DNA from: Octopus bimaculoides
Taxonomy: Eukaryota
Length of the DNA: 44,660 bases
Assembly: GCF_001194135.2 (NCBI RefSeq)
Contig: NC_068983.1
Location: 106,676,683-106,721,342 of the forward strand
Reading direction: 5' to 3'
Shown: positions 491 to 44,652 of the stretch, piece by piece
Layout of the letters: each line of letters opens with the position of its first letter
Numbering within the stretch: position 1 is the first letter of the stretch
Translations under genes and position numbers: made by a program
The notes under the pieces: model-generated
What the model saw: only the letters and a program-made list of their open reading frames with translations
Told to the model about the DNA's origin: nothing
Database searches by the model: none

Positions 491-529
<39 letters not shown>

Positions 530-731
530 TTAGTGACCATTTCCCATACTGGAATAGGTTGTTAGTTTGACTAGAGTTGGTAAGCTGGAGAGCTGCACCA
601 GGTTCCAGTCTGTTTTGGCTTGTTTTCTACAGCTGGATGCCCTTCTTAACACCAACCATTTCACAGAATGCACTGGATGCCTTTAACATGTTACTGGCAC
701 CGGTGCCTTTCATGTGTCACCGGCACTGGCC
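491..731 (-). mobile_element. RTE-tail element (family D) with (GAT)n tail
   Basis: Reverse complement carries ggtgttaagaagggcatccagctgtagaaa...ctggtgcagc and ends in the (CAT)n run at 491-528; homologous to 38190-38476 and 40319-40716. Confidence 0.8.
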
Positions 732-2759: not shown

Positions 2760-4039
2760 TAGAGAGAGAGAGAAAGAGAGAGAGATACACATATATTAAA
2801 ATTGGATCTAAAATATGTCTTTCTTTTGACATATTTTAAAAATGGCTAATTAATATGTTTAGAGTAGCTATATAGATATACAGATATATTAAGTTCAACC
2901 TGAAGGTTAAGATTTAAAAATCGACGAACTTTGGTATTCTGGCAAATAAAGTCTTAGGCATATTAAAGTACAGAAATATATACATTTATAAAATCTTTAG
3001 ATAACAATAATCATGACAAAATTTTGTAAATGAAAAATGTATCATCATCATCATCATCGTTTAATGTCCGCCTTCTATGCTGGCATGATAAATAAATATA
3101 AAAACATGTCTTAGAAACAACCAGGAAAACAATACATTTGGGAAGAATTATGTTTATTTATTTTCATGCAAAGAATCCTTATATGATGTAAGTAATCCTT
3201 ATATTTGCTAAAAGGAGATGAATATAAAACATGGATATTTATAAAAAGAAAACATTGACTGCTACTGAATAGTGTCATATTAATATGTGTATAAATTATA
3301 AGTTGTAACTGATAACAATATCTTATATGTTGAAACATGGAATTATAAAATCAAGAACAACATAAATAGAGTAAGTGAAATCAAATTTAATGAAAATATG
3401 TGAGAATGAATATATTGCAACTGAAGTGAGAATATAAATGATTATATGGCAGGAAAAGTGGATTAAAATTAAACAGAAATAGAAAAGATTACAAGTTTGG
3501 ATAAGGTGTACAAAAATACCAAATGAAATGTAAAGGAAAAACAAAACCAAAAGTCAAAAGAAAAAACTTATGCTAGCTTAGGAATGCAATGAGATAAATA
3601 TGAAACATGAAATTAAAAGAAAATGTGTGAATGTTAATGCATGAAGATAAAAGAATATGATTTACAGTAAGGTAATGGATAGAAATAAAGTAGAAATGTA
3701 AAAAAGAGGTGAGTGTAAAATAAAAACGAAGGAGTTATAATTTTGAATAAGGAAATAAGACTGTATAACCTGGAAAAATTATGATCAGTTGAATCAAATG
3801 TAGTTGAAAGAGGTGTTGTGAAAAAAATTAATTACTGTAAAATAAAATTAATAAAGATAAATGGATGGTTTAGTAAGAATTTTCATTTAGCCATTTTGAT
3901 AGTTCATTCACTCATCTATTCAGCCATTCAACTAACCGACCGATCATCCATTCATCCATCTATCCATCCATCCATTTTCTCTACCCATTTTTCTTCAGAC
4001 ACCTTCTCCATAATGCCCTATCAGTTAAATTCCTTTACT

Positions 4040-5450
4040 AGTGCTCCAATGCAAAATTTTGCTTGATATTCATTATTCAGCTCAACTTTTGCACACTATA
4101 CTAAAGAGCTAATGAGGAAGTTTTCCTTACTTGGGTAGTGATAAGAGTTTATACGTTTTTAAGTGTTTAGTGATGTCAAAATATTGTTTGGCATATGCTT
4201 TGCTTTGAAGAAATTCAGAGCTGTGAAACTTTGTAAGTGTAATAAACTTAGGCAGATATTTAAAAAAGTTTTAGTGTCTATGTTCACTGTAAAAGGAAGT
4301 GAAACTAACTTGAGGAACGTCTTAGTTATATTTTTTCAAACATTGAAACTGAAAACTGGATTATGCCACAATTTTTCAATTTTTATTTCTGTTTGGGAGT
4401 TGAAGGTTTGAGTATATATTCTATCTCACTGAAAAATCTATGACAGTTAAATGCTTCATTGCAGAATTCTAAAATTTTTGTAAAAGTTGCTACATTTAGA
4501 GATAAAGATGATATATGACTGATAAAATTGGAAACTAAATTACAGAAAATATTACGTGGATATGATTACAAGTCATATTAATATAAAATAACCTTTCATT
4601 AAGTTTGTAATAGGAAAAAAAAATATTCATCAGCTGCTAACTTTAATTCTTTGGTCTAGAAAATTAACTTTTGAAAGGTAACACTGACAGCAAACTTTAA
4701 ATCTAATTCACTAAAGAATGAAATAATTATTCTATCTATATCATACTATTCATATTTCACAAGGAAAATTATCCATCTTCATGATAAATTCCTCTAGTCA
4801 GGAATCTTTTATACCACAAATTATAAAGATAAAGCAATGAGGGCACACATTTCTTCCCCATTAAATTTTTTTTTCCTATTACAAACTTATGAGTCATAGT
4901 TATATCCAACAATATCTCTCCATTCTTGTTTTACCTGGGCTGCATTTTGGAAAAACAAGAGAGATTTTCTAGGATGCAGAATAACTTCAATATCTGAATA
5001 GGGAGTATGGTTTTGGCAAAGGCTAATACTTGTAGCAGTAGTGACTTTGTGTGATAAAGAGATAAAAATTGTAATCTCAAATTGGAACGAAAAAAACCTA
5101 TTCTTTTTTTTTATCATGGATATTACTGAACTGTTCTATGAGACTATCACGCTATTATTCCATACTGGAGTCAAACTATTTTTATGCCTCTAAAAATAAC
5201 AGGATCAAGTATTTTTTTATACCTAAGCCTGTTTTTACTGGGTTGATTAACCTATTTAGGGTGACTAGTGAACTTAACTTTATGGTTCTTGAGTGTGTTG
5301 TGTGGTGGGAAAGAAGCCAATGATTCAACTCATGTATTTTGAGTGCAGAGAAGTTTCTGACTCTATATTCTTTGATTTTATTTTCATTTTATTTTTCATA
5401 CTTGTTACTCTTTTCCTTTTTCTTGATTATATCCAAGGCTGTTTGTGATA
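4040..5450 (-). mobile_element. Degenerate Penelope-like retroelement (RT plus start of GIY-YIG region), YxDDG type; may extend to about 5850
   Basis: Manual minus-strand translation through stops and frameshifts gives, in the expected order: RLINPVKTGLG; LIEQFSNIHDKKKNRF..FQFEI; DIEVILHPRKSLLF; FNGEEMCALIAL (cf. FDGAEVCELVGL); GIYHEDG at 4772-4792 (cf. GLYRDDG); FYINMTCNH; LWHNPVFSFNV*KNITKTFLKLV (cf. IWFNPPYSKNV.TNIGK.FL); AKFCIG. Confidence 0.85.
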
Positions 5451-11249: not shown

Positions 11250-11935
11250 TAGCTGTGCAAAAGTTTTCGGTCACCTCACATAAACCAGTCAAGATATAGT
11301 GTTTTAAACAAAAATGTCTATAATGAAAATTTATTACAGAATGTTAATTTCCAGAAGTTACTGTACATTGTTAATATTTTGTGTGGCTTCCCTTAGCTTG
11401 AATAATTGCTTCAATGTGCCTGGGTAGAGATGCGTACAAATCCGTCACCATCTTCACAGGTATAAGACGATATTCTCTGTGGCTGAGCTCCCTAACCCTA
11501 ACTCTTCAAAATTGTGTGGATTCTTCTGACAAACTCTTCTCTTTAGTTCTGTCCACATTTGCTCAATGATATTTAAGTCAGGGATCTGAGCTGGCCAGTC
11601 TTTCAATGCAATTACACCTTCATGAGTCAGACTCTTTTGAGTTGCATGTGATCAGTGGCATGAAGTTCTGTCATGCTGAAAAATCTCACCTTCATCCAAG
11701 TCTGGTATCAAATTGTCCTTCAGCAACTGGATGTATTTGGTACTATTCAAGTTACCGCCAATTTTAACCAACTTCCTTGAACCATCACATTTTATGTATC
11801 CCCAAAGCATCAGACTCTTACCCCAAAACTTAACTGTTTTCATTGTATAACATGGGTCATTTCGCTTTCCTGGAGGCATTCTGACAAATTCCTGTTTATT
11901 ACAAAGTGAAACGACCCATGTTACATGAGGGAAAC
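11250..11935 (-). mobile_element. Tc1-like transposase catalytic-domain fragment with 3' TIR remnant
   Basis: TVKFWGKSLMLWGYI...GNLNSTKYIQLLKDNL...IFQHD...DWPAQIPDLNIIEQMWTELKRRV with an internal stop; TIR-like tagctgtgcaaaagttttcggtcac at 11250. Confidence 0.92.
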
Positions 11936-11959
11936 ACTGAGGTTTGGGGGTAAAGAGTG

Positions 11960-12238
11960 ATGGTTGGTAACAGGAAGGGCATCTACTTGTAGAGAATTTA
12001 CCATCTGACCTATGCAAACAAGAGTGTTTTGTGTTTGTGCTTGTCTCCCACTATTACTTAATAACTAGTGCTGATTTGTTTATACCCCTGTAACTTAGCA
12101 GTTTGGAAAAAGAGACTGATAGAATAAGTACTGGACTTAAAGAAAAATATAAGTACTGAGATTAATTCATTTGACTTCAACATGGTGCCCCAACATGGCC
12201 ACAGTCTAATGACTGAAACAAGTAAAAGATAAAAGATA
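11960..12238 (+). mobile_element. SINE family A, 3' part, diverged
   Basis: gtaacttagcagtttgg...gatagaataagtact...ggtgccccaacatggccacagtc...gactgaaacaagtaaaag. Confidence 0.75.
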
Positions 12239-14824: not shown

Positions 14825-15490
14825 TACAATGATATCAGTTTTATTCGGCATGATTTCTGCAGCTGGATGCCCTTACTTATGTCAACCATTTTCAGCATGT
14901 GCTGGGTGTTTTTGATGTGGACAAGTATGGGTGCTTTTTACATGGACTATACAAGGGCTCTTGCAAGGCAGAAACCTCTTCAGCTGGTTGAGAAACATTA
15001 AAAATTTTGGTGTGGTGGGTGGGAATTTTTGAGTACAGCAAGGTGCTACATATCTCAGTCTATTAGATATCTCAGTCCATTAGATATCTTGGTCCATCAT
15101 AAGGTTCAGTGTCCTGAGATCAGCCTTCATTATTTCATCCAATGTCATCCTGGCCACCCTCTTTCACTTGTTCCAACCATTGTAAGTAATCAGACCTTCT
15201 TTATGTAGCTGTCTACATCCATCTGCATCACATGACCAAACAAGCGCAATCATCTCTCTTCCATATTGCATCAAATTTCTCTTATGCTTAACTCTTCTCT
15301 CAATACACTAGCACTCTATTGTACATGTACACTTTCATTGCACATCTAGCAGATCATACTTGTTACATTCCCCGCTAGCTTTCAGATATCCTCTACATTC
15401 AGGGCCTATGTCTCACGACTATGTAGCATTGCTGTTCGTATACATGCATCATATAATCTTCCTTTCAATCAGAGACACCTTTGGTTGTCA
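14825..15490 (-). mobile_element. RTE-clade LINE 3' end (ORF C-terminus plus 3' UTR)
   Basis: Decayed LPLLTTKGVS..KGRLYDACIRTAMLHS.ET*ALNVED...SVLREELSIREI...RLRLFGHVMQMD...GTSERGWPRMTLDEIMKADL, followed by catgtaaaaagcaccca...ggttgacataagtaagggcatccagctgcagaaa. Confidence 0.85.
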
Positions 15491-15664
15491 ACAGAGGTAA
15501 AAACTGTAACTGACTGGAATCTGGTACAGCTCTCCTGCTTGACAACTCTGGTCAAACCGTCCAACCCATGCCAGTATGGAAAATGGAAGTTGAATGATGA
15601 TGATTATGTTGATGATATCAAATCAATGTAAAGCATGCTATCTTAGAGATAGCATGTTTGCTCT

Positions 15665-16074: not shown

Positions 16075-16115
<41 letters not shown>

Positions 16116-16299
16116 TCTATATAACTGTATGTGTATCTTATGCATATCTATGCATGTATAAGTGTGTGTCTGTGTATGAATGTGTGTGTGTGTATGTATG
16201 TTTGTATGTATGTGTAGTGTACGTATGTTTGTATGTATCAATATACCTTTATATTTATGTGTGTGCGTGTGTATGTATATATATTTTCAGACATGTAGA

Positions 16300-17377: not shown

Positions 17378-17712
17378 AAGCTTGACTCCATCGGTCACGA
17401 ATGACCATGGGTGCACCTAAGAGGTTCCTCTCCAGGGTACAAGTCCGGGTGGAAAGTCACCTCACCGGTAAATGTACAACCTAGGGTTGTTTTTTCTATG
17501 GAAGACCAGCAGTCACCCATGCATACCAGTCTCCCCTCTCTATGCCACTAATGTTATCCAAATAAAAGGCAAAGGCCGATACAACTTGGCACCAGTGATG
17601 TCGCAATTTATTTCTACAGCTGAGGGAACTGGAGCAACATGAAATAAATTGTCTTGCTCAAGAACACAACACACAGCCTGGTCCAGGAATTGAACACATA
17701 ACCTCATGATCA
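17378..17712 (-). mobile_element. SINE-like element (further family) abutting the truncated Tc1
   Basis: Minus strand begins catgaggttatgtgttcaattcctggaccagg...gtgttcttgagcaagac (B-box-like plus CORE-like); ends gtgaccgatggagtc, similar to the family B 3' end. Confidence 0.65.
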
Positions 17713-18368
17713 TAAGCTTTGTGCAGCTCCCGGCAAACAGTTTTTTGTGGAAACTGAGTTCTCGAAGAGGTCATTAATCTCTGCAGTAATTTTGGGAGCT
17801 GTACATTTGTGATCCTTTCTAACAGTTTGTATAAGAGTCTGATGGTCCCTATCTGAAAGTTTTGGTTTACTTCTGGAATTTTGTTTTGACAAGGAGGTTT
17901 TTCCCTCTTTTCCAAAGGCTGTCATTACTTTCGAGACAGTACTTCTTGATACACCAAATATTTCGGCTGTTTTCGCTACACTAGCGCCTGCCATACGAGC
18001 ACCAACAATTTGACCTCTTTGAAAGTCTAATAGATCTGTCATTTTAATGAATTTTATTTACCTTTTTCTGATGATATCTGAAAAGAAACAGTANNNNNNN
18101 NNNAATATTTCGGCTGTTTTCGCTACACTAGCGCCTGCCATACGAGCACCAACAATTTGACCTCTTTGAAAGTCTAATAGATCTGTCATTTTAATGAATT
18201 TTATTTACCTTTTTCTGATGATATCTGAAAAGAAACAGTAATTTTAGCAAAACATATTAAGTAACACTAATAATAAATAAAAAAAATGTAAAAATAAACA
18301 GGCTTTTGATGGTTTTATAGATATTTCAAAATTATGATGCTATGATGCATTATTTTATCCAACCCCTG
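17713..18368 (-). mobile_element. Tc1-like element 5' half: TIR and N-terminal HTH domain
   Basis: TA-CAGGGGTTGGATAAAATAATG end at 18368; ORF 18042-17710 MTDLLDFQRGQIVGARMAGASVAKTAEIFGVSRSTVSKVMTAF...PKLSDRD...VRKDHKCTAPKITAE. Confidence 0.93.
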
Positions 18369-23194: not shown

Positions 23195-24091
23195 NNNNNN
23201 NNNNNNNNNNNNNNNNNNNNNNNNNNNNNNNNNNNNNNNNNNNNNNNNNNNNNNNNNNNNNNNNNNNNNNNNNNNNNNNNNNNNNNNNNNNNNNNNNNNN
23301 NNNNNNNNNNNNNNNNNNNNNNNNNNNNNNNNNNNNNNNNNNNNNNNNNNNNNNNNNNNNNNNNNNNNNNNNNNNNNNNNNNNNNNNNNNNNNNNNNNNN
23401 NNNNNNNNNNNNNNNNNNNNNNNNNNNNNNNNNNNNNNNNNNNNNNNNNNNNNNNNNNNNNNNNNNNNNNNNNNNNNNNNNNNNNNNNNNNNNNNNNNNN
23501 NNNNNNNNNNNNNNNNNNNNNNNNNNNNNNNNNNNNNNNNNNNNNNNNNNNNNNNNNNNNNNNNNNNNNNNNNNNNNNNNNNNNNNNNNNNNNNNNNNNN
23601 NNNNNNNNNNNNNNNNNNNNNNNNNNNNNNNNNNNNNNNNNNNNNNNNNNNNNNNNNNNNNNNNNNNNNNNNNNNNNNNNNNNNNNNNNNNNNNNNNNNN
23701 NNNNNNNNNNNNNNNNNNNNNNNNNNNNNNNNNNNNNNNNNNNNNNNNNNNNNNNNNNNNNNNNNNNNNNNNNNNNNNNNNNNNNNNNNNNNNNNNNNNN
23801 NNNNNNNNNNNNNNNNNNNNNNNNNNNNNNNNNNNNNNNNNNNNNNNNNNNNNNNNNNNNNNNNNNNNNNNNNNNNNNNNNNNNNNNNNNNNNNNNNNNN
23901 NNNNNNNNNNNNNNNNNNNNNNNNNNNNNNNNNNNNNNNNNNNNNNNNNNNNNNNNNNNNNTATATATATATATATATATATATATGTAAATGTATATAT
24001 AAATGTGTGTCTGTACACACACACATGCACACACACACACGCACACACACACACATATATACATACATATATATGTAAATTTATATATAAA

Positions 24092-24124
<33 letters not shown>

Positions 24125-24216
24125 ATATGTATGTATGTATCTAAGTAGATGGATAGATATATAGATAAATACATAGATAGGTAAATATATAAGTACACAC
24201 ACACATGTATATATGT

Positions 24217-26891: not shown

Positions 26892-27394
26892 TTGTGATTC
26901 TCAACCATTTTTTAATTATGGAACCCTTTGATTACTGTTTCATCATTCTGATGGACACCCGTAGCCAATCGGATGTTTAAAAGCAAGTTTTATAGACACT
27001 TCTATTTTACACATTTACTTATGTAAGTTTGCATAGCACACCCTAAGATAACATGTTTCTGTGACTGGAAACATGCTGAACTATGTTAAGCATTGGAGAA
27101 GAAACTTAGCAGTTTTATACAATAAATAGGTCTGAAACAAAATATTTTCCTGGACCCCTAAAATATTATCATGAACCATCAATTTACTATTTTGCTCATG
27201 TGGATCCCGCGTTAGGAAGGGCATCCAGCTGTAGAAACTCTGCCAAATCAGATTGGAGCCTGGTGCAGCCATCTGGTTCTACAGTCCTCAGTCAAATCGT
27301 CCAACCCATGCTAGCATGGAAAGCGGACATTAAACAATGATGATGATAAGGATGCATCCCCAGCAGTCATATGAACCACAGTTGAGAACCACTG
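26892..27394. mobile_element. hAT-type MITE with perfect 8-bp TSD, containing a nested family D tail (about 27209-27347)
   Basis: Left end ttgtgattctcaacc (decayed), right end gttgagaaccactg; atgttgtc at both 26884-26891 and 27395-27402. Confidence 0.85.
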
Positions 27395-29260: not shown

Positions 29261-29334
29261 ACACACACATGTATATATATGTATGTATATTTGTATGTAT
29301 GTATATATATATATATATACACACATATATATAT

Positions 29335-29394
<60 letters not shown>

Positions 29395-36435: not shown

Positions 36436-36622
36436 TGTTTATGTGTGTGTGTCTTTGTGTTTTTGTTTGTTTGCCCCCACCATTGCTTGACAAGCGATTG
36501 ATAGAATAAGTACCAGGCTTACAAAGAATAAGTCCTGGAGTTGATTTCTTTGACAAAAAGGTAGTGCTCCAGCATGGCCACAATCAAATGGCTGAAACAA
36601 GTAAAAAAATAAAGAAATAAAA
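36200..36622 (+). mobile_element. SINE family A with internal (AT)n(GT)n
   Basis: Head, microsatellite at about 36364-36450 and tail all present. Confidence 0.9.
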
Positions 36623-36643
36623 GAATATATATTTATATATATA

Positions 36644-37571
36644 TAGGCACAGGCATAGCTGTGTCGTAAGAAGCTTGCATCCTAACTACATGGTTCCGGG
36701 TTCAATCCCACTGCATGGCACCTTGGGCAAGTTGTCTCCTACTCTAACCTTGGCACGACCAAAGTCTTGTGAGTGGATTTGGTCGATGGAAACAGAAAGA
36801 AGGCAATTGTATGTATATATATATATATATATATATATNNNNNNNNNNNNNNNNNNNNNNNNNNNNNNNNNNNNNNNNNNNNNNNNNNNNNNNNNNNNNN
36901 NNNNNNNNNNNNNNNNNNNNNNNNNNNNNNNNNNNNNNNNNNNNNNNNNNNNNNNNNNNNNNNNNNNNNNNNNNNNNNNNNNNNNNNNNNNNNNNNNNNN
37001 NNNNNNNNNNNNNNNNNNNNNNNNNNNNNNNNNNNNNNNNNNNNNNNNNNNNNNNNNNNNNNNNNNNNNNNNNNNNNNNNNNNNNNNNNNNNNNNNNNNN
37101 NNNNNNNNNNNNNNNNNNNNNNNNNNNNNNNNNNNNNNNNNNNNNNNNNNNNNNNNNNNNNNNNNNNNNNNNNNNNNNNNNNNNNNNNNNNNNNNNNNNN
37201 NNNNNNNNNNNNNNNNNNNNNNNNNNNNNNNNNNNNNNNNNNNNNNNNNNNNNNNNNNNNNNNNNNNNNNNNNNNNNNNNNNNNNNNNNNNNNNNNNNNN
37301 NNNNNNNNNNNNNNNNNNNNNNNGTATATATGTATATATATATATGTATGTGTGTATGTGTTTGTATGTCTGTGTTTGTCCCCCCAACTTCGCTTGACAA
37401 CCGATGCTGGTGTGTTTATGTCCCCGTAACTTAGCGATTCGGCAAAAGAGACCGATAGAATAAGTACTAGGCTTCCAAATAATAAGTCCTGGGGTCGATT
37501 TGCTCGACTAAAGGCGGTGCTCCAGCATGGCCACAGTCAAAAGACTGAAACAAGTAAAAGAGTAAAAGAGT
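36644..37571 (+). mobile_element. SINE family A spanning an N-gap at its internal microsatellite
   Basis: Head 36644-36810, gap, tail 37370-37571 nearly identical to 17170-17356; could also be halves of two copies. Confidence 0.8.
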
Positions 37572-38128: not shown

Positions 38129-38186
<58 letters not shown>

Positions 38187-38189
38187 GCC

Positions 38190-38476
38190 AGGTCGTTGCC
38201 AGTGCTGCTGGACTGGCTCCCATGCAGGTGGCATGTAAAAAACACTTTTTTGAGTGTGGCCGTGGCCAGTACCATGTGACTGGCCCTCGTGTCGGTGGCA
38301 CGTAAAAGCACCCACTACACTCTCGGAGTGGTTGGCATTAGGAAGGGCATCCAGCTGTAGAAATTCTGCCAGATCAGATTGGAGCCTGGTGCAGCCTTCT
38401 GGCTTGCCAGTCCTCAGTCAAATCGTCCAACCCAAGCTAGCATGGAAAGTGGACGTTAAACGATGACGATGATGAT
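38190..38476 (+). mobile_element. Family D (RTE-tail) element with two ~60-nt internal repeats and (GAT)n tail
   Basis: ggtcgttgccagtgctgctggactggctcc...actggccctcgtgtcggtggcacgtaaaagcaccc...aggaagggcatccagctgtagaaa...gacgttaaacgatgacgatgatgat. Confidence 0.9.
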
Positions 38477-39474
38477 GTACATATCCATGTATGCATGTGT
38501 ATGTATATTACATATGCATATGTTTGCATGTATGTATGTATGTATATATGTATGTATGTATGTATGCATGTATGTATGTATGTATGTATGTATGTATATA
38601 TATGTGTATGTATGTATGCATGACTGCATGCATACTTACTTATATGCATTTTACTAAGAGGAAAGGAAAGCATTGTAATAATTTATTGTAATGCTGAGAA
38701 TGCTCTTTGTTACTACTCCAACATTCGTGATTATCCTTGTTAATCATATAACTCAAAACACACATACTTGTCACACACACACATAAGCATACAGAAAAGT
38801 TGATGGACAAACCCACATTTATATTTGTCTGTCTGTATGAATGTCTGTGTGTGTACATGCACATGCATACGTGCAAGTGCACACACACACATATAATGTA
38901 TGTACTATCTGTATCCTCCACGATGACTGTTTAAATATAAGCATGTATTCTTTGACATTGAATCCTCGATTAGACACCAGCAAATTAAATTTAGTAAGCA
39001 ACGCAAATAAAAAGAAGGAACTGAAACAAAGGTTGCAGACCTCAGCTCATCCGGAGAATAACAACAATAATTGAAGCTGGCAGAGGATTGAAAATTTGAT
39101 ATTTAAAGGATTAGCAGCAGTAGTTGAGGCAACAGCAAATTTCATATCACTGTTCATCTGTATAAACTTGATATACAAATATCAGTGGTAGTAGTAGTAA
39201 TTGCAACACAAGTTTTCCTGACATATGGTAACTCTGTAATATTTAAGATTATGATAACAATAGCTAGCTACTGTTATAAATCATGTAGAGTTATTCCTAT
39301 AAATACTACAGCATTGAGTCTTATTTATTAATATTGCGACAATATTATCACAGTTACAACATATTCTGGATCATTTTATATATAGTGTGACAGCATTATT
39401 ACTGTTAGACATATTCTGAAATATCAAATATTTATAAATATTATTATGACATTGTCAGTGTAATACATTATAGC

Positions 39475-39869
39475 CTGTGGCTGTGTGGTAAGCAGCTGGC
39501 TTCCCAACCACATGGTTTCAGGTTCAGTCCTACTGTGTGGCACCTTGGGCAAGTGTCTTCTACTCTAGCCCTGAGCCAACCGAACCCTTATGAGTGGCTT
39601 TGGTAGGCAGAAACTGAAAGGCGGTGAACTGGCAGAAACATTAGCATGCAGGGCGAAATGCTTAGCTGTATTTTGTCTGCCATTACGCTCTGAGTTCAAA
39701 TTCTGCCAAGGTCGACTTTGCCTTTCATCCTTTCGGGGTCGATTAGATTAGTACCAGTTACGCACTGAGGGTCGATATAATTGACTTAATCTCTTTGTCT
39801 GTCCTTGTTTGTCCCCTCTATGTTTAGCCCCTTGTGGGCAATAAAGAAATAAGAAACTGAAAGAACCCA

Positions 39870-39907
<38 letters not shown>

Positions 39908-40112
39908 AAGTGTATGTGTTTGTCTCCCACCACCACTTGACAACTGGTGTTGGTGTCTTTACGTCCCCATAACTTAGCAATTTAACCAAGGATATCAATA
40001 GAATAACCAGGCTTTTAAAAAAAGTACTGTGGTCAACTCATTCTACTAAAATTCTTCAAAGGTGGTGCCCCAGCATGGCCACAATCTAATGACTGAAACA
40101 AGTAACAGAATG
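39475..40112 (+). mobile_element. SINE family A interrupted by a family C insertion
   Basis: Head ends at agaaactgaaag (39620) and resumes at 39852. Confidence 0.88.
39621..39851 (+). mobile_element. SINE family C, full length, with 12-bp TSD
   Basis: agaaactgaaag at 39609-39620 and 39852-39863; B-box-like gagttcaaattc; A-rich tail. Confidence 0.92.
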
Positions 40113-40118
40113 AAAGAA

Positions 40119-40147
<29 letters not shown>

Positions 40148-40149
<2 letters not shown>

Positions 40150-40318
40150 AAAATTGGAATGANNNNNNNNNNNNNNNNNNNNNNNNNNNNNNNNNNNNNN
40201 NNNNNNNNNNNNNNNNNNNNNNNNNNNNNNNNNNNNNNNNNNNNNNNNNNNNNNNNNNNAGATTAGCATGGTCCCTGCAAAAGGATGACACACAAATTTG
40301 TGAAGCGTTCCATATTTT
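40148..40318 (+). pseudogene. U6: U6 snRNA retrocopy, split by an N-gap
   Basis: 40260-40318 AGATTAGCATGGTCCCTGCAAAAGGATGACACACAAATTTGTGAAGCGTTCCATATTTT differs from canonical metazoan U6 at 5 of 59 positions (three at CpGs); 40148-40162 CTAAAATTGGAATGA matches the upstream U6 segment at 14/15. The first ~24 nt of U6 are absent and no promoter is visible. Confidence 0.93.
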
Positions 40319-40716
40319 AACCGCCTGATTGGCCCTCGTGCCAGTGGAATGTTAAAAGCACATCCGAGCATGATTGTTGCCAGGGCCATGGATTGGCTCC
40401 TGTGCCGGTGGCATGTAAAAAGCACCGTTTGAGCGTGATCGTTGCCAGCATTGCCTTCCCAGCACATGTGAAAAACAACATTCAAGCGTGGTCGTTGTCA
40501 GTGCCGCTGGACTGGCCCTCGTGCTGGTGACACGTAAAAGCTCCCACTACACTCTCGGAGTGGTTGGCATTCAGAAGGGAATCCAGCTGCAGAAACTTTG
40601 CCAGATCAGATTGAGCCTGGTGCAGTCTTCTGGCTCACCAGTCCTTAGTGAAACTGTCCAACCCATGCCAGCACGGAAAGCGGACGTTAAATGACGATGA
40701 TGATGATAATGATGAT
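40319..40716 (+). mobile_element. 5'-truncated family D (RTE-tail) element fused to the U6 3' end
   Basis: Begins two bases after the U6 TTTT within a ~60-nt internal repeat unit; ends gacgttaaatgacgatgatgatgataatgatgat. Confidence 0.88.
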
Positions 40717-40721
40717 ATATA

Positions 40722-40875
40722 GGCGTGACTGTGTGGTAAGAAGCTTGCTTCTCAATCACATGGTTCTAGGTACAGTCCCACTGTGTGGCATATCAGGCAA
40801 GTGTCTTCTACTATAGCCTTGGGATGACCAAAGCCTTGTGAGTGGATTTGGTAGATGGAAACTGGAAGAAGCCCC
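40722..40875 (+). mobile_element. SINE family A head only
   Basis: ggcgtgactgtgtggtaagaagcttgc...ggatttggtagatggaaactggaagaagccc. Confidence 0.85.
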
Positions 40876-41136
40876 ATCCCACTATCATCTGTTCCCCAAC
40901 ATGAAAAAACTCTTAGCTGGGAATCAGTATTGCTGTGATGATGATGTCATATTTGCTGTTGATGACTTTTTTGACCAACAGAGTGGAAGCTTCTTCACCA
41001 ATGGGATCCAAGCACTGCAACACTGGTGGAAGCAATGTGTGGATCATAAGAAGGATTATGTTGAAAAATGAATGTTATTTGGTGAAATTCCATTAGTGTA
41101 TCTCAGTCAGCCTGTGAACTTTTCAGCTGCCCCTTG
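40872..41136 (+). mobile_element. Mariner transposase C-terminus plus 3' TIR
   Basis: APSHYHLFPNMKKLLAG...FFTNGIQALQHWWKQCVDHKKDYVEK* (cf. SPDLAPSDYHLF...GDYVEK); TIR gcctgtgaacttttcagctgccccttg-TA. Confidence 0.9.
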
Positions 41137-44019: not shown

Positions 44020-44235
44020 TATGCCTAGTTTGGTATTAGGAAGGGCATCCCCATTGGCATTAGGAAAGACAACTAGCTGTAGAAACCTAGCCAAAACAGA
44101 CTATGGAACTTGGTGTGGATTCTGGTCTTGCCAGTTCCTGTCAAGCTGTTCTACCAATGCTAGCATGGAAAATGGATGTTAAATGTGGATGGTTGATGGT
44201 GAAATGATAATGATGATGATGATGATGGTGATGAT
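44020..44235 (+). mobile_element. Family D tail, diverged
   Basis: ggtattaggaagggcatcc...catggaaaatggatgttaaa...gatgatgat. Confidence 0.75.
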
Positions 44236-44454: not shown

Positions 44455-44652
44455 GGGGCATGTAAAAGGTACCCACTACACTCTTGGAGTGGTTGCCATT
44501 AGAAAGGGCATCCCACCATAGAAACCAAGCCAAAAATCGGACTGGACCCTGATACAGTTCTCCGGCTTACCAGTTTCTATCAAATCATCTAACCCATGCC
44601 AGTATGGAAAATGGACACTATATGATGATGGTGATGATGATAATGATGATGA
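44455..44652 (+). mobile_element. Family D tail, diverged
   Basis: ggcatgtaaaaggtacccactacactcttggagtggttgccattagaaagggcatcc...(GAT)n. Confidence 0.8.

What the first reader, a model, noticed from the sequence alone, without database searches (positions are those of the whole stretch)
40148..40716. U6 snRNA / RTE-tail chimeric retrocopy
Seen: a U6 copy ending in exactly four T (ccatatttt, 40318) is followed after two A by a 5'-truncated family D element ending in (GAT)n. Established: U6/L1 chimeras with U6 joined at its 3' U-tract to a LINE 3' segment are well known in mammals and attributed to RNA ligation (RtcB) or template switching. Inference: the partner here is RTE-related, because the same tail follows the RTE ORF at 14825-15490, so RTE machinery in a mollusc-like genome may produce U6 chimeras. 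If many copies share this junction it would instead be a U6-headed (Pol III) SINE family. I do not recall either being described for this lineage. Caveats: the U6 5' 24 nt are missing, no TSD is identifiable, and a 97-N gap stands where only 8 nt (TACAGAGA) are expected.
Basis: partly seen in the sequence, partly recalled or inferred. Interest (0 to 1): 0.8.

Follow-up and report, generated by a model that had tools for sequence, protein, structure and literature searches.

The report
U6 pseudogene fused to LINE tail
A dead, partial copy of the U6 spliceosomal RNA is fused at its natural 3' end to the tail of an RTE-type jumping gene, most likely because both were copied into the genome together; this by-product is already known from vertebrates, so it is real but fairly ordinary.

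Summary
The described sequence is there. U6 nt 25-39 (40148-40162) and nt 48-106 (40260-40318, ending TTTT) lie on either side of the 97-N gap. They are collinear and in the same orientation, and only 8 nt are missing. After AA comes a 396-nt 'D' element that ends in TAA plus (GAT)8. The U6 is a dead copy: it lacks nt 1-24, has no promoter, and 4 of its 5 CpGs are decayed.

D is the 3' end of an RTE-like LINE. Eight copies in the window share the 3' end and have different 5' ends. The last ~45 nt of D are the last codons of a full-length endonuclease+RT LINE found in an environmental contig.

The best reading is a single U6/RTE chimeric retrocopy, formed by template switch or RNA ligation. It looks like the 5'-truncated, TSD-poor U6 chimeras reported with L2 in platypus and with RTE in Anolis and opossum (PMC4476161). 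I could not test for single-event origin, copy number of the junction, or the gap, because no reads or genome were available.

Verdict: new member of a known kind, low to moderate interest.

The parts
39478..40120 (+). Upstream flank: a tRNA-type SINE ('SINE-A') with its usual end ...ACAAGTAA(A)AGA(G)T(A)AAAGA(G)TAT. A second SINE is nested inside it at 39621-39852. It is context, not part of the chimera, unless this is a tripartite chimera.
   Evidence: six copies of the SINE-A tail occur in the window, and this one ends at ~40120. No U6 5' piece lies upstream of its head.
40121..40149 (+). (CT)14 microsatellite at the 5' junction. Its last CT coincides with U6 nt 25-26.
   Evidence: TRF. It is not part of the SINE-A tail in the five other copies. 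Its origin is inferred only: either slippage from the U6 CT or sequence already at the target.
40148..40162 (+). U6 snRNA nt 25-39 (CTAAAATTGGAATGA), with one CpG->TpG change.
40163..40259 (.). Assembly gap (97 N). U6 collinearity predicts only 8 nt (TACAGAGA, the ACAGAGA box).
   Evidence: Reads were not available.
40260..40318 (+). U6 snRNA nt 48-106, ending in four T. There are five differences from canonical U6, three of them at CpG sites.
40319..40320 (+). AA at the U6/D junction. It is either extra nucleotides or diverged D sequence; it aligns with GT/AG of the D repeat unit.
   Evidence: Ambiguous.
40321..40544 (+). D element, 5' part: about 3.5 degenerate tandem units of ~64 nt (GATTGGCCC..GTAAAAGCAC..GAGCGTGATCGTTGCCAG).
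   Evidence: units at 40327, 40391, 40465 and 40510. The sister copy at 38186-38300 has the same units.
40545..40690 (+). D element, conserved 3' module shared by all eight D copies. 40652-40687 reads NCPTHASTESGR and is followed by TAA at 40688-40690. This is the C-terminal coding end and the candidate RT-recognition hairpin of an RTE-like LINE.
40693..40716 (+). (GAT)8 microsatellite tail (GAC GAT GAT GAT GAT AAT GAT GAT), the 3' end of the retrocopy.
   Evidence: The same tail occurs on the other D copies and on L001-L003.
40717..40870 (+). Downstream flank: ATATA, then the head of another SINE-A (from 40722), which is cut off at ~40870.
   Evidence: An analogous SINE tail-(TA)n-SINE head arrangement without any insert occurs at 36570-36660.
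15139..15468 (-). RT C-terminal remnant of an RTE-like LINE (..LRLFGHVMQMD..RGWPG..), 5'-truncated and containing stop codons. Its 3' region at 14835-14913 (-) is homologous to D positions 217-295.
   Evidence: tblastn with the L004 ORF: 31% over 110 aa, E 2e-10, minus strand.

Best explanation
This is a one-off U6/RTE chimeric retropseudogene. An RTE-type LINE began target-primed reverse transcription on the (GAT)n tail and conserved 3' terminus of an RTE RNA and copied about 400 nt. Synthesis then continued onto U6 snRNA at its mature oligo-U 3' end. That happened either because the reverse transcriptase switched templates or because U6 had already been ligated to a cleaved RTE RNA (RtcB-type ligation of the U6 2',3'-cyclic phosphate). 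Synthesis stopped at about U6 nt 25, just 3' of the U6 5' stem-loop, and the cDNA was joined to the target next to a SINE tail. The copy has no function and has since decayed.

Shown: the anatomy, the RTE-like nature of D, and the death of the U6 copy. Inferred: that both parts arrived in one event, and which of the two joining mechanisms applied.
For: 1. U6 is joined in the same orientation to a 5'-truncated LINE 3' end, exactly at its natural 3' end (T4, within 2 nt).
2. D carries the complete LINE terminus plus microsatellite that a stringent LINE needs for priming.
3. Seven other D copies in 44 kb share the 3' end, have different 5' ends and carry no U6. This is the pattern expected if chimeras are rare by-products of an abundant LINE (criterion from PMC4494074).
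4. The missing U6 nt 1-24 are not upstream of the adjacent SINE, so the truncation was not caused by a SINE splitting a U6 gene.
5. The two parts have similar decay: U6 6/74 = 8.1%, D 12/124 = 9.7% private differences.
6. The structure matches published chimeras with stringent LINEs. In platypus, almost all U6-L2 chimeras have a 5'-truncated U6 upstream of a short L2 piece, with TSDs of 1-9 bp. The opossum U6-RTE_Mdo chimera is 5'-truncated with no TSD, and Anolis has three U6-RTEX-2 chimeras (PMC4476161).
7. The junction lies inside an uninterrupted contig, 59 nt from the gap.
Against: 1. There is no target-site duplication beyond ATAT, so a single insertion event is not demonstrated.
2. This is one locus only. 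No orthologous empty site, no reads and no second copy could be examined.
3. The region is a dense nest of repeats (two SINEs, D, a transposase remnant within 1.6 kb), so chance adjacency is possible.
4. The D divergence figure is inflated if the subject copy belongs to a slightly different subfamily, so the age match is weak.
5. The AA at the junction and the (CT)14 at the 5' end have no firm explanation.
6. The 97-N gap could hide more than 8 nt.
Confidence: 0.6

Rival explanations
1. It is a decayed member of a U6-headed non-autonomous retroposon family (SINEU-like). A single ancestral U6/RTE chimera became a master copy and amplified using RTE machinery.
For: snRNA-headed retroposon families exist (SINEU, PMC4494074). 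A 2026 Octopus vulgaris repeat annotation lists one 'SINE/U' family covering 369 kb, with 19 recent insertions, and a 'U-L1' family (PMC13282606). D has the RTE terminus needed for mobilisation in trans. In the window, only the subject D copy extends far enough 5' to show a head, so the window cannot exclude this reading.
Against: Metazoan U6 promoters lie upstream of the gene, and here even the first 24 nt are missing. The T4 run at the junction is a Pol III terminator, so a Pol III transcript would not reach D. The seven other D copies have scattered 5' ends with no common start and no U6. It is not known which snRNA heads the O. vulgaris SINE/U family. The junction 26-mer was found nowhere else, although only in a collection that is unlikely to hold this genome.
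Confidence: 0.15
2. There were two independent events. An older 5'-truncated U6 fragment (a gene remnant or retrocopy) was already present, and a D element later happened to insert with its 5' end next to the U6 3' end.
For: There is no TSD around the composite. The locus is an insertion nest. Other D copies also abut other repeats, for example the copy at 38186 abuts (TA)n and the copy at 15521 abuts the RT remnant.
Against: The 5' end of a LINE insertion is not aimed by the endonuclease, so landing within 2 nt of the natural U6 end and in the same orientation is a coincidence of roughly 1 in 100 or less. A stand-alone U6 retrocopy is hard to make with stringent LINEs that need their own 3' tail (argument of PMC4476161). 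No U6 downstream genomic flank survives. The two parts have similar decay.
Confidence: 0.15
3. It is an assembly artefact. The scaffold wrongly joins a U6-containing contig end to another locus, or the contig is chimeric at the U6/D junction.
For: This is a short-read style scaffold with 12 gaps in 44.7 kb. One gap lies inside the U6, at its most conserved, multi-copy part. The stated gap length (97) disagrees with the 8 nt expected.
Against: The U6/D junction is inside continuous sequence with no repeat shared between the two sides that could mislead an assembler. The two gap edges are collinear pieces of one U6 in the right order and orientation (chance about 1e-4). Gap sizes from mate pairs are rough estimates.
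Confidence: 0.05

Closest known systems
U6 chimeras with stringent LINEs: U6-L2/Mon-1 in platypus, U6-RTEX-2 in Anolis, U6-RTE_Mdo/RTESINE1 in opossum (Doucet et al. 2015, PMC4476161)
   Same: U6 is joined at its 3' end to a short 5'-truncated LINE 3' segment that ends in the LINE's simple-repeat tail. The U6 is usually 5'-truncated. TSDs are tiny or absent. The partner is from a non-L1 clade, including RTE.
   Different: The host here appears to be a mollusc (cephalopod-like repeats; my inference, not tested) rather than a vertebrate. This is a single locus with no TSD and no census.
Mammalian U6/L1 chimeric pseudogenes (Buzdin 2002; Garcia-Perez 2007; RtcB ligation model of Moldovan et al. 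2019, PMC6789731)
   Same: U6 ends in an oligo-T tract (4-8 T) and is conjoined to a variably 5'-truncated LINE in the same orientation.
   Different: In mammals the U6 is almost always full length, the element ends in poly(A), and it is flanked by 6-19 bp TSDs at an L1 endonuclease site. Here the U6 lacks 24 nt, the tail is (GAT)n and there is no TSD.
SINEU, snRNA-headed retroposons of crocodilians (Kojima 2015, PMC4494074)
   Same: An snRNA-derived 5' part lies upstream of a LINE-mobilisable 3' part. Both have an internal oligo-T and no internal Pol III promoter.
   Different: SINEU heads are U1/U2, and the families have many copies with shared junctions and no matching abundant LINE. Here the matching LINE tail is abundant without the head, and only one copy is known.
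Octopus RTE LINEs (RTE-2_OV, Petrosino et al. 2022, PMC9115989)
   Same: [quoted passage not shown]
   Different: I could not compare sequences with RTE-2_OV, and D has ~64-nt tandem units upstream of the terminal module.

Membership tests
U6/LINE chimeric retropseudogene | U6 sequence is joined at its natural oligo-T 3' end, in the same orientation, directly to a 5'-truncated LINE 3' segment. | tested here: met
   U6 nt 48-106 ends TTTT at 40318, followed by AA, then D from 40321 on the same strand.
U6/LINE chimeric retropseudogene | The LINE part runs to the LINE's own 3' terminus and tail. | tested here: met
   The terminal module and (GAT)8 are shared with 7 other D copies and with L001-L004.
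U6/LINE chimeric retropseudogene | The whole composite is flanked by one target-site duplication. | tested here: inconclusive
   Only ATAT is found on both sides, which is not significant. Published L2/RTE chimeras often have TSDs of 0-9 bp, so this neither supports nor excludes membership.
U6/LINE chimeric retropseudogene | Both parts arrived in one event (orthologous empty site, or presence/absence as a unit). | not testable with these tools
   No reads, no related genomes.
snRNA-headed SINE family (SINEU-like) | Many copies share the same head/body junction and diagnostic changes. | not testable with these tools
   None of the 7 other D copies in the window reaches the junction position.
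snRNA-headed SINE family (SINEU-like) | The head can drive transcription through the body. | tested here: not met
   U6 nt 1-24 are absent, and a SINE tail plus (CT)14 lie where the upstream promoter would be. T4 lies between head and body. SINEU itself also fails this feature.
Functional U6 snRNA gene | A full-length ~107-nt conserved sequence with an upstream promoter. | tested here: not met
   The 5' 24 nt are missing, 4 of 5 CpGs are decayed and there are 6/74 differences. The Rfam score nevertheless passes the gathering threshold.
RTE-clade LINE 3' end (identity of D) | Copies are anchored at the 3' end and have variable 5' truncation. | tested here: met
   Eight copies, with 5' ends at D positions 1, ~146, 202, 212, 245, 255, 298 and 345.
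RTE-clade LINE 3' end (identity of D) | The 3' terminus is shared with an autonomous single-ORF endonuclease+RT element whose ORF runs into a short simple-repeat tail. | tested here: met
   L004 has a 1090-aa ORF with Exo_endo_phos and RVT_1. It ends ..GNRPTHASMESGRKTD* inside (TGAT)3, and its terminal 40 nt are 90% identical to 40652-40691. The window's own minus-strand RT remnant shares 79 nt with D.
RTE-clade LINE 3' end (identity of D) | The RT domain is placed within the RTE clade by phylogeny. | not tested
   No reference RT set was available. The RTE assignment rests on architecture and on the RLRWFGHV..RGRGRP C-terminal motif, which I recall from RTE-type elements.

The most novel reading that the evidence does not exclude
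The locus is a decayed member of a U6-headed, RTE-mobilised retroposon family in cephalopods, possibly the unexplained 'SINE/U' family annotated in Octopus vulgaris. That would make it the first U6-derived SINE-like family, and one that amplifies without an internal Pol III promoter.
Probability: 0.13. Interest if true: 0.55.

Novelty: new member of a known kind. Interest (0 to 1): 0.3.

Why it matters
If it is confirmed as a single event, it would extend U6/LINE chimera formation by stringent, tail-dependent LINEs from vertebrates (L1, L2, RTE) to a protostome RTE. That would support the view that U6 capture by template switch or RtcB-type ligation is a general property of non-LTR retrotransposition. 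Such chimeras can also serve as dated markers of past RTE activity in a lineage where RTE elements are claimed to be active in the brain.

There is a practical point too. This truncated pseudogene scores above Rfam's U6 gathering threshold, so it would be annotated as a U6 gene by default.

Tried and rejected
- **Junction peptide:** searching the 75-aa minus-strand peptide that spans the junction (40260-40485) against the protein collection, in the hope of finding other assemblies or copies, gave no candidates.
- **Exact look-ups of window ORFs to fetch the same locus from other assemblies:** none is on record.
- **Protein search with the window's RT remnant:** no hit at E <= 0.001, and Pfam found nothing on it either.
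- **Exact junction 26-mer in metagenome contigs:** absent.
- **Was the U6 5' end split off by the SINE insertion?** No U6 5' piece exists anywhere in the window. The two other short U6-like matches (2788-2806 and 5079-5090) do not extend and are chance.
- **TSD search over 80 nt on each side:** nothing beyond 4-6-mers in the wrong places.
- **Rfam at permissive E-values, looking for other small-RNA fragments at the 5' ends of other D copies:** only microsatellite-driven miRNA false positives. ARAGORN found no tRNA.
- **Literature search for the D tail motif as a text string:** only unrelated primers.
- **Functional U6 gene:** rejected (truncated, CpG-decayed, no promoter).
rejected, because the two are on opposite strands.

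Full report
**What is there**

Rfam finds exactly one family above its gathering score in the 44.7-kb window. It is U6 at 40259-40319 on the + strand, at 53.1 bits against a threshold of 44. The 15 nt just left of the gap, CTAAAATTGGAATGA at 40148-40162, equal nt 25-39 with one mismatch. AA follows at 40319-40320.

**The gap**

- Both gap edges are pieces of one 107-nt RNA, in the right order and orientation, and exactly 8 nt (TACAGAGA) are missing between them.
- Elsewhere in the window only 6 of 82,400 15-mers resemble the U6 5' half that well. The left edge being U6 by chance is therefore about 1e-4.
- The 97 N are thus most likely a poor size estimate across the most conserved, multi-copy part of U6. 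More sequence hidden there cannot be excluded.
- The U6/D junction is not at the gap. It lies 59 nt inside continuous sequence.

**The U6 is a dead copy**

- Nt 1-24 are absent here and everywhere else in the window, including upstream of the neighbouring SINE. So the truncation was not caused by a SINE splitting a gene.
- The place of the promoter is taken by a SINE tail and (CT)14.
- Six of the 74 covered positions differ from canonical U6, and 4 of the 5 CpGs are changed to TpG or CpA.
- It still passes Rfam's threshold, which is a trap for automatic annotation.

**What D is**

- blastn finds seven more D copies in the window, at 504-700(-), 3041-3087(-), 15521-15616(+), 27216-27354(+), 38191-38477(+), 44054-44235(+) and 44459-44650(+). 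All share the 3' end and (GAT)n, and each starts at a different point. This is the signature of LINE 5' truncation.
- The subject copy is the longest. Its 5' half consists of about 3.5 degenerate ~64-nt tandem units, which the sister copy at 38186 shares.
- A scan of metagenome contigs with a 22-nt D-tail pattern returned four contigs.
- L004 carries a full-length 1090-aa single ORF with endonuclease and RVT_1 domains. Its last codons..GNRPTHASMESGRKTD*, are the D terminal module: 90% nucleotide identity to 40652-40691. The stop codon sits inside a (TGAT)3 tail.
- L001-L003 show the same module followed by (GAT)4-8.
- Four D copies in the window translate to SNRPTHASMESGR*.
- A stop codon followed directly by a microsatellite is what Petrosino et al. 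report for octopus RTE-2_OV (PMC9115989).
- The module can fold into a small conserved hairpin, CCAUG-loop-CAUGG, but with little covariation.
- I did not place the RT in a phylogeny. 'RTE-like' therefore rests on architecture and on the RLRWFGHV..RGRGRP motif as I recall it.

tblastn with the L004 ORF aligns aa 936-1045 to 15468->15139, at 31% identity and E 2e-10. The + strand D tail at 15521-15616 therefore lies back to back with it and does not follow it. Even so, the remnant's own 3' region (14913->14835, minus strand) aligns to D positions 217-295 at 70% over 79 nt, E 2e-9. The conclusion that D is related to this LINE family stands, on different evidence.

**Flanks**

- Upstream is a tRNA-type SINE at 39478-40120, carrying a nested SINE with an 11-bp TSD. 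Its tail ends as in five other copies, and (CT)14 is not part of that tail.
- Downstream, ATATA is followed by the head of another such SINE.
- The same SINE tail-(TA)n-SINE head arrangement, without any insert, occurs at 36570-36660. A plausible empty site can therefore be imagined for the whole (CT)n-U6-D block.
- The only duplication is ATAT, which carries no weight in AT-rich DNA.

**One event or two**

Points in favour of a single chimeric retrocopy:
- The join is within 2 nt of the natural U6 3' end and in the same orientation.
- The 5' end of a LINE insertion is not aimed, so an independent landing there is a coincidence of roughly 1 in 100 or less (my estimate).
- A stringent LINE cannot mobilise U6 alone (the argument of PMC4476161).
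- The two parts are similarly decayed, at 8.1% and 9.7%.
- D without a head is abundant, which is Kojima's criterion for independent chimeras rather than a SINE family (PMC4494074).

Points against: there is no TSD, this is a single locus, and it sits in a repeat nest.

A U6-headed family cannot be excluded. Only the subject copy reaches the junction position, and an O. vulgaris annotation lists a 'SINE/U' family of unknown head (PMC13282606). However, the head has no promoter and T4 separates it from the body.

**Comparison with what is known**

- Doucet et al. 2015 (PMC4476161) describe U6 chimeras with L2 in platypus: 40 cases, almost all with 5'-truncated U6 and TSDs of 1-9 bp.
- The same paper reports chimeras with RTEX-2 in Anolis (three) and with RTE_Mdo/RTESINE1 in opossum (5'-truncated, no TSD). 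It concludes that L1, L2 and RTE can all do this.
- The joining step may be a template switch or RtcB ligation of the U6 cyclic phosphate to a 5'-OH RNA (PMC6789731). The sequence here cannot tell these apart, and the AA is unexplained under either model.
- I found no report of such chimeras in molluscs or other invertebrates.

**Verdict**

The most likely reading (0.6) is a one-off U6/RTE chimeric retropseudogene, which makes it a new member of a known kind. That the window is cephalopod is my inference from the SINE sequences and was not tested. The decisive tests (reads across the gap, a genome-wide census of U6 3' flanks, and orthologous loci) could not be run here.

Noticed in passing
L004:163-3435 (-), L001:455-520 and 1197-1266, L002:1114-1180, L003:725-860; window 40640-40716 and the other D tails: The last ~45 nt of the D/RTE-like element (CGTCCAACCCATGCTAGCATGGAAA.CGGACGTTAA) are 82-90% identical between this window and four environmental contigs. 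The RT proteins, by contrast, are only ~31% identical. L004 holds an apparently intact 1090-aa endonuclease+RT(+PHD-like) LINE. The module folds into a small hairpin with little covariation. It may be a conserved RT-recognition element, or a sign of horizontal spread of this LINE lineage.
   Followed up: partly
window 39610-39863: A second SINE (39621-39852) is nested inside the tRNA-type SINE and is flanked by a perfect 11-bp target-site duplication, GAAACTGAAAG (39610-39620 and 39853-39863). This shows that clean TSDs can be seen in this region when they exist.
   Followed up: partly
window 15139-15468 (-) and 15521-15616 (+): An RT C-terminal remnant of an RTE-like LINE on the minus strand lies back to back with a 5'-truncated D tail on the plus strand. 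These are two separate insertions, not one element.
   Followed up: yes
window 40259-40319: The truncated, CpG-decayed U6 pseudogene still scores above Rfam's U6 gathering threshold (53.1 vs 44 bits), so automatic annotation would call it a U6 gene.
   Followed up: yes
window 36570-36660: A SINE tail, a (TA)n run and the head of the next SINE lie directly in series. This is the same arrangement as the flanks of the U6-D block and suggests that these SINEs often land next to each other's AT-rich tails.
   Followed up: no
window 17710-18042 (-), 11652-12017 (-), 40880-41072 (+): These are remnants of Tc1/mariner-type transposases. The first has a helix-turn-helix N-terminus (Pfam HTH_28, HTH_23). 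The other two look like DDE and C-terminal pieces from memory but give no Pfam hit.
   Followed up: partly
window, e.g. 24019-24138, 38552-38620, 29271-29341, 16077-16271: At permissive E-values Rfam reports over 100 matches to miRNA families (mir-297, mir-3149, mir-466, mir-1277 and others). All fall on (TG)n, (TA)n or (TATG)n microsatellites and all are far below the gathering scores, so they are artefacts.
   Followed up: no
window gaps at 906, 6773, 10252, 13848, 16547, 16998, 18094, 20115, 23195, 36839, 40163, 41451: There are twelve assembly gaps (3,278 N in total) in 44.7 kb, most of them bordered by microsatellites. The gap inside U6 is the exception: it is bordered by a conserved multi-copy RNA gene sequence.
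   Followed up: no
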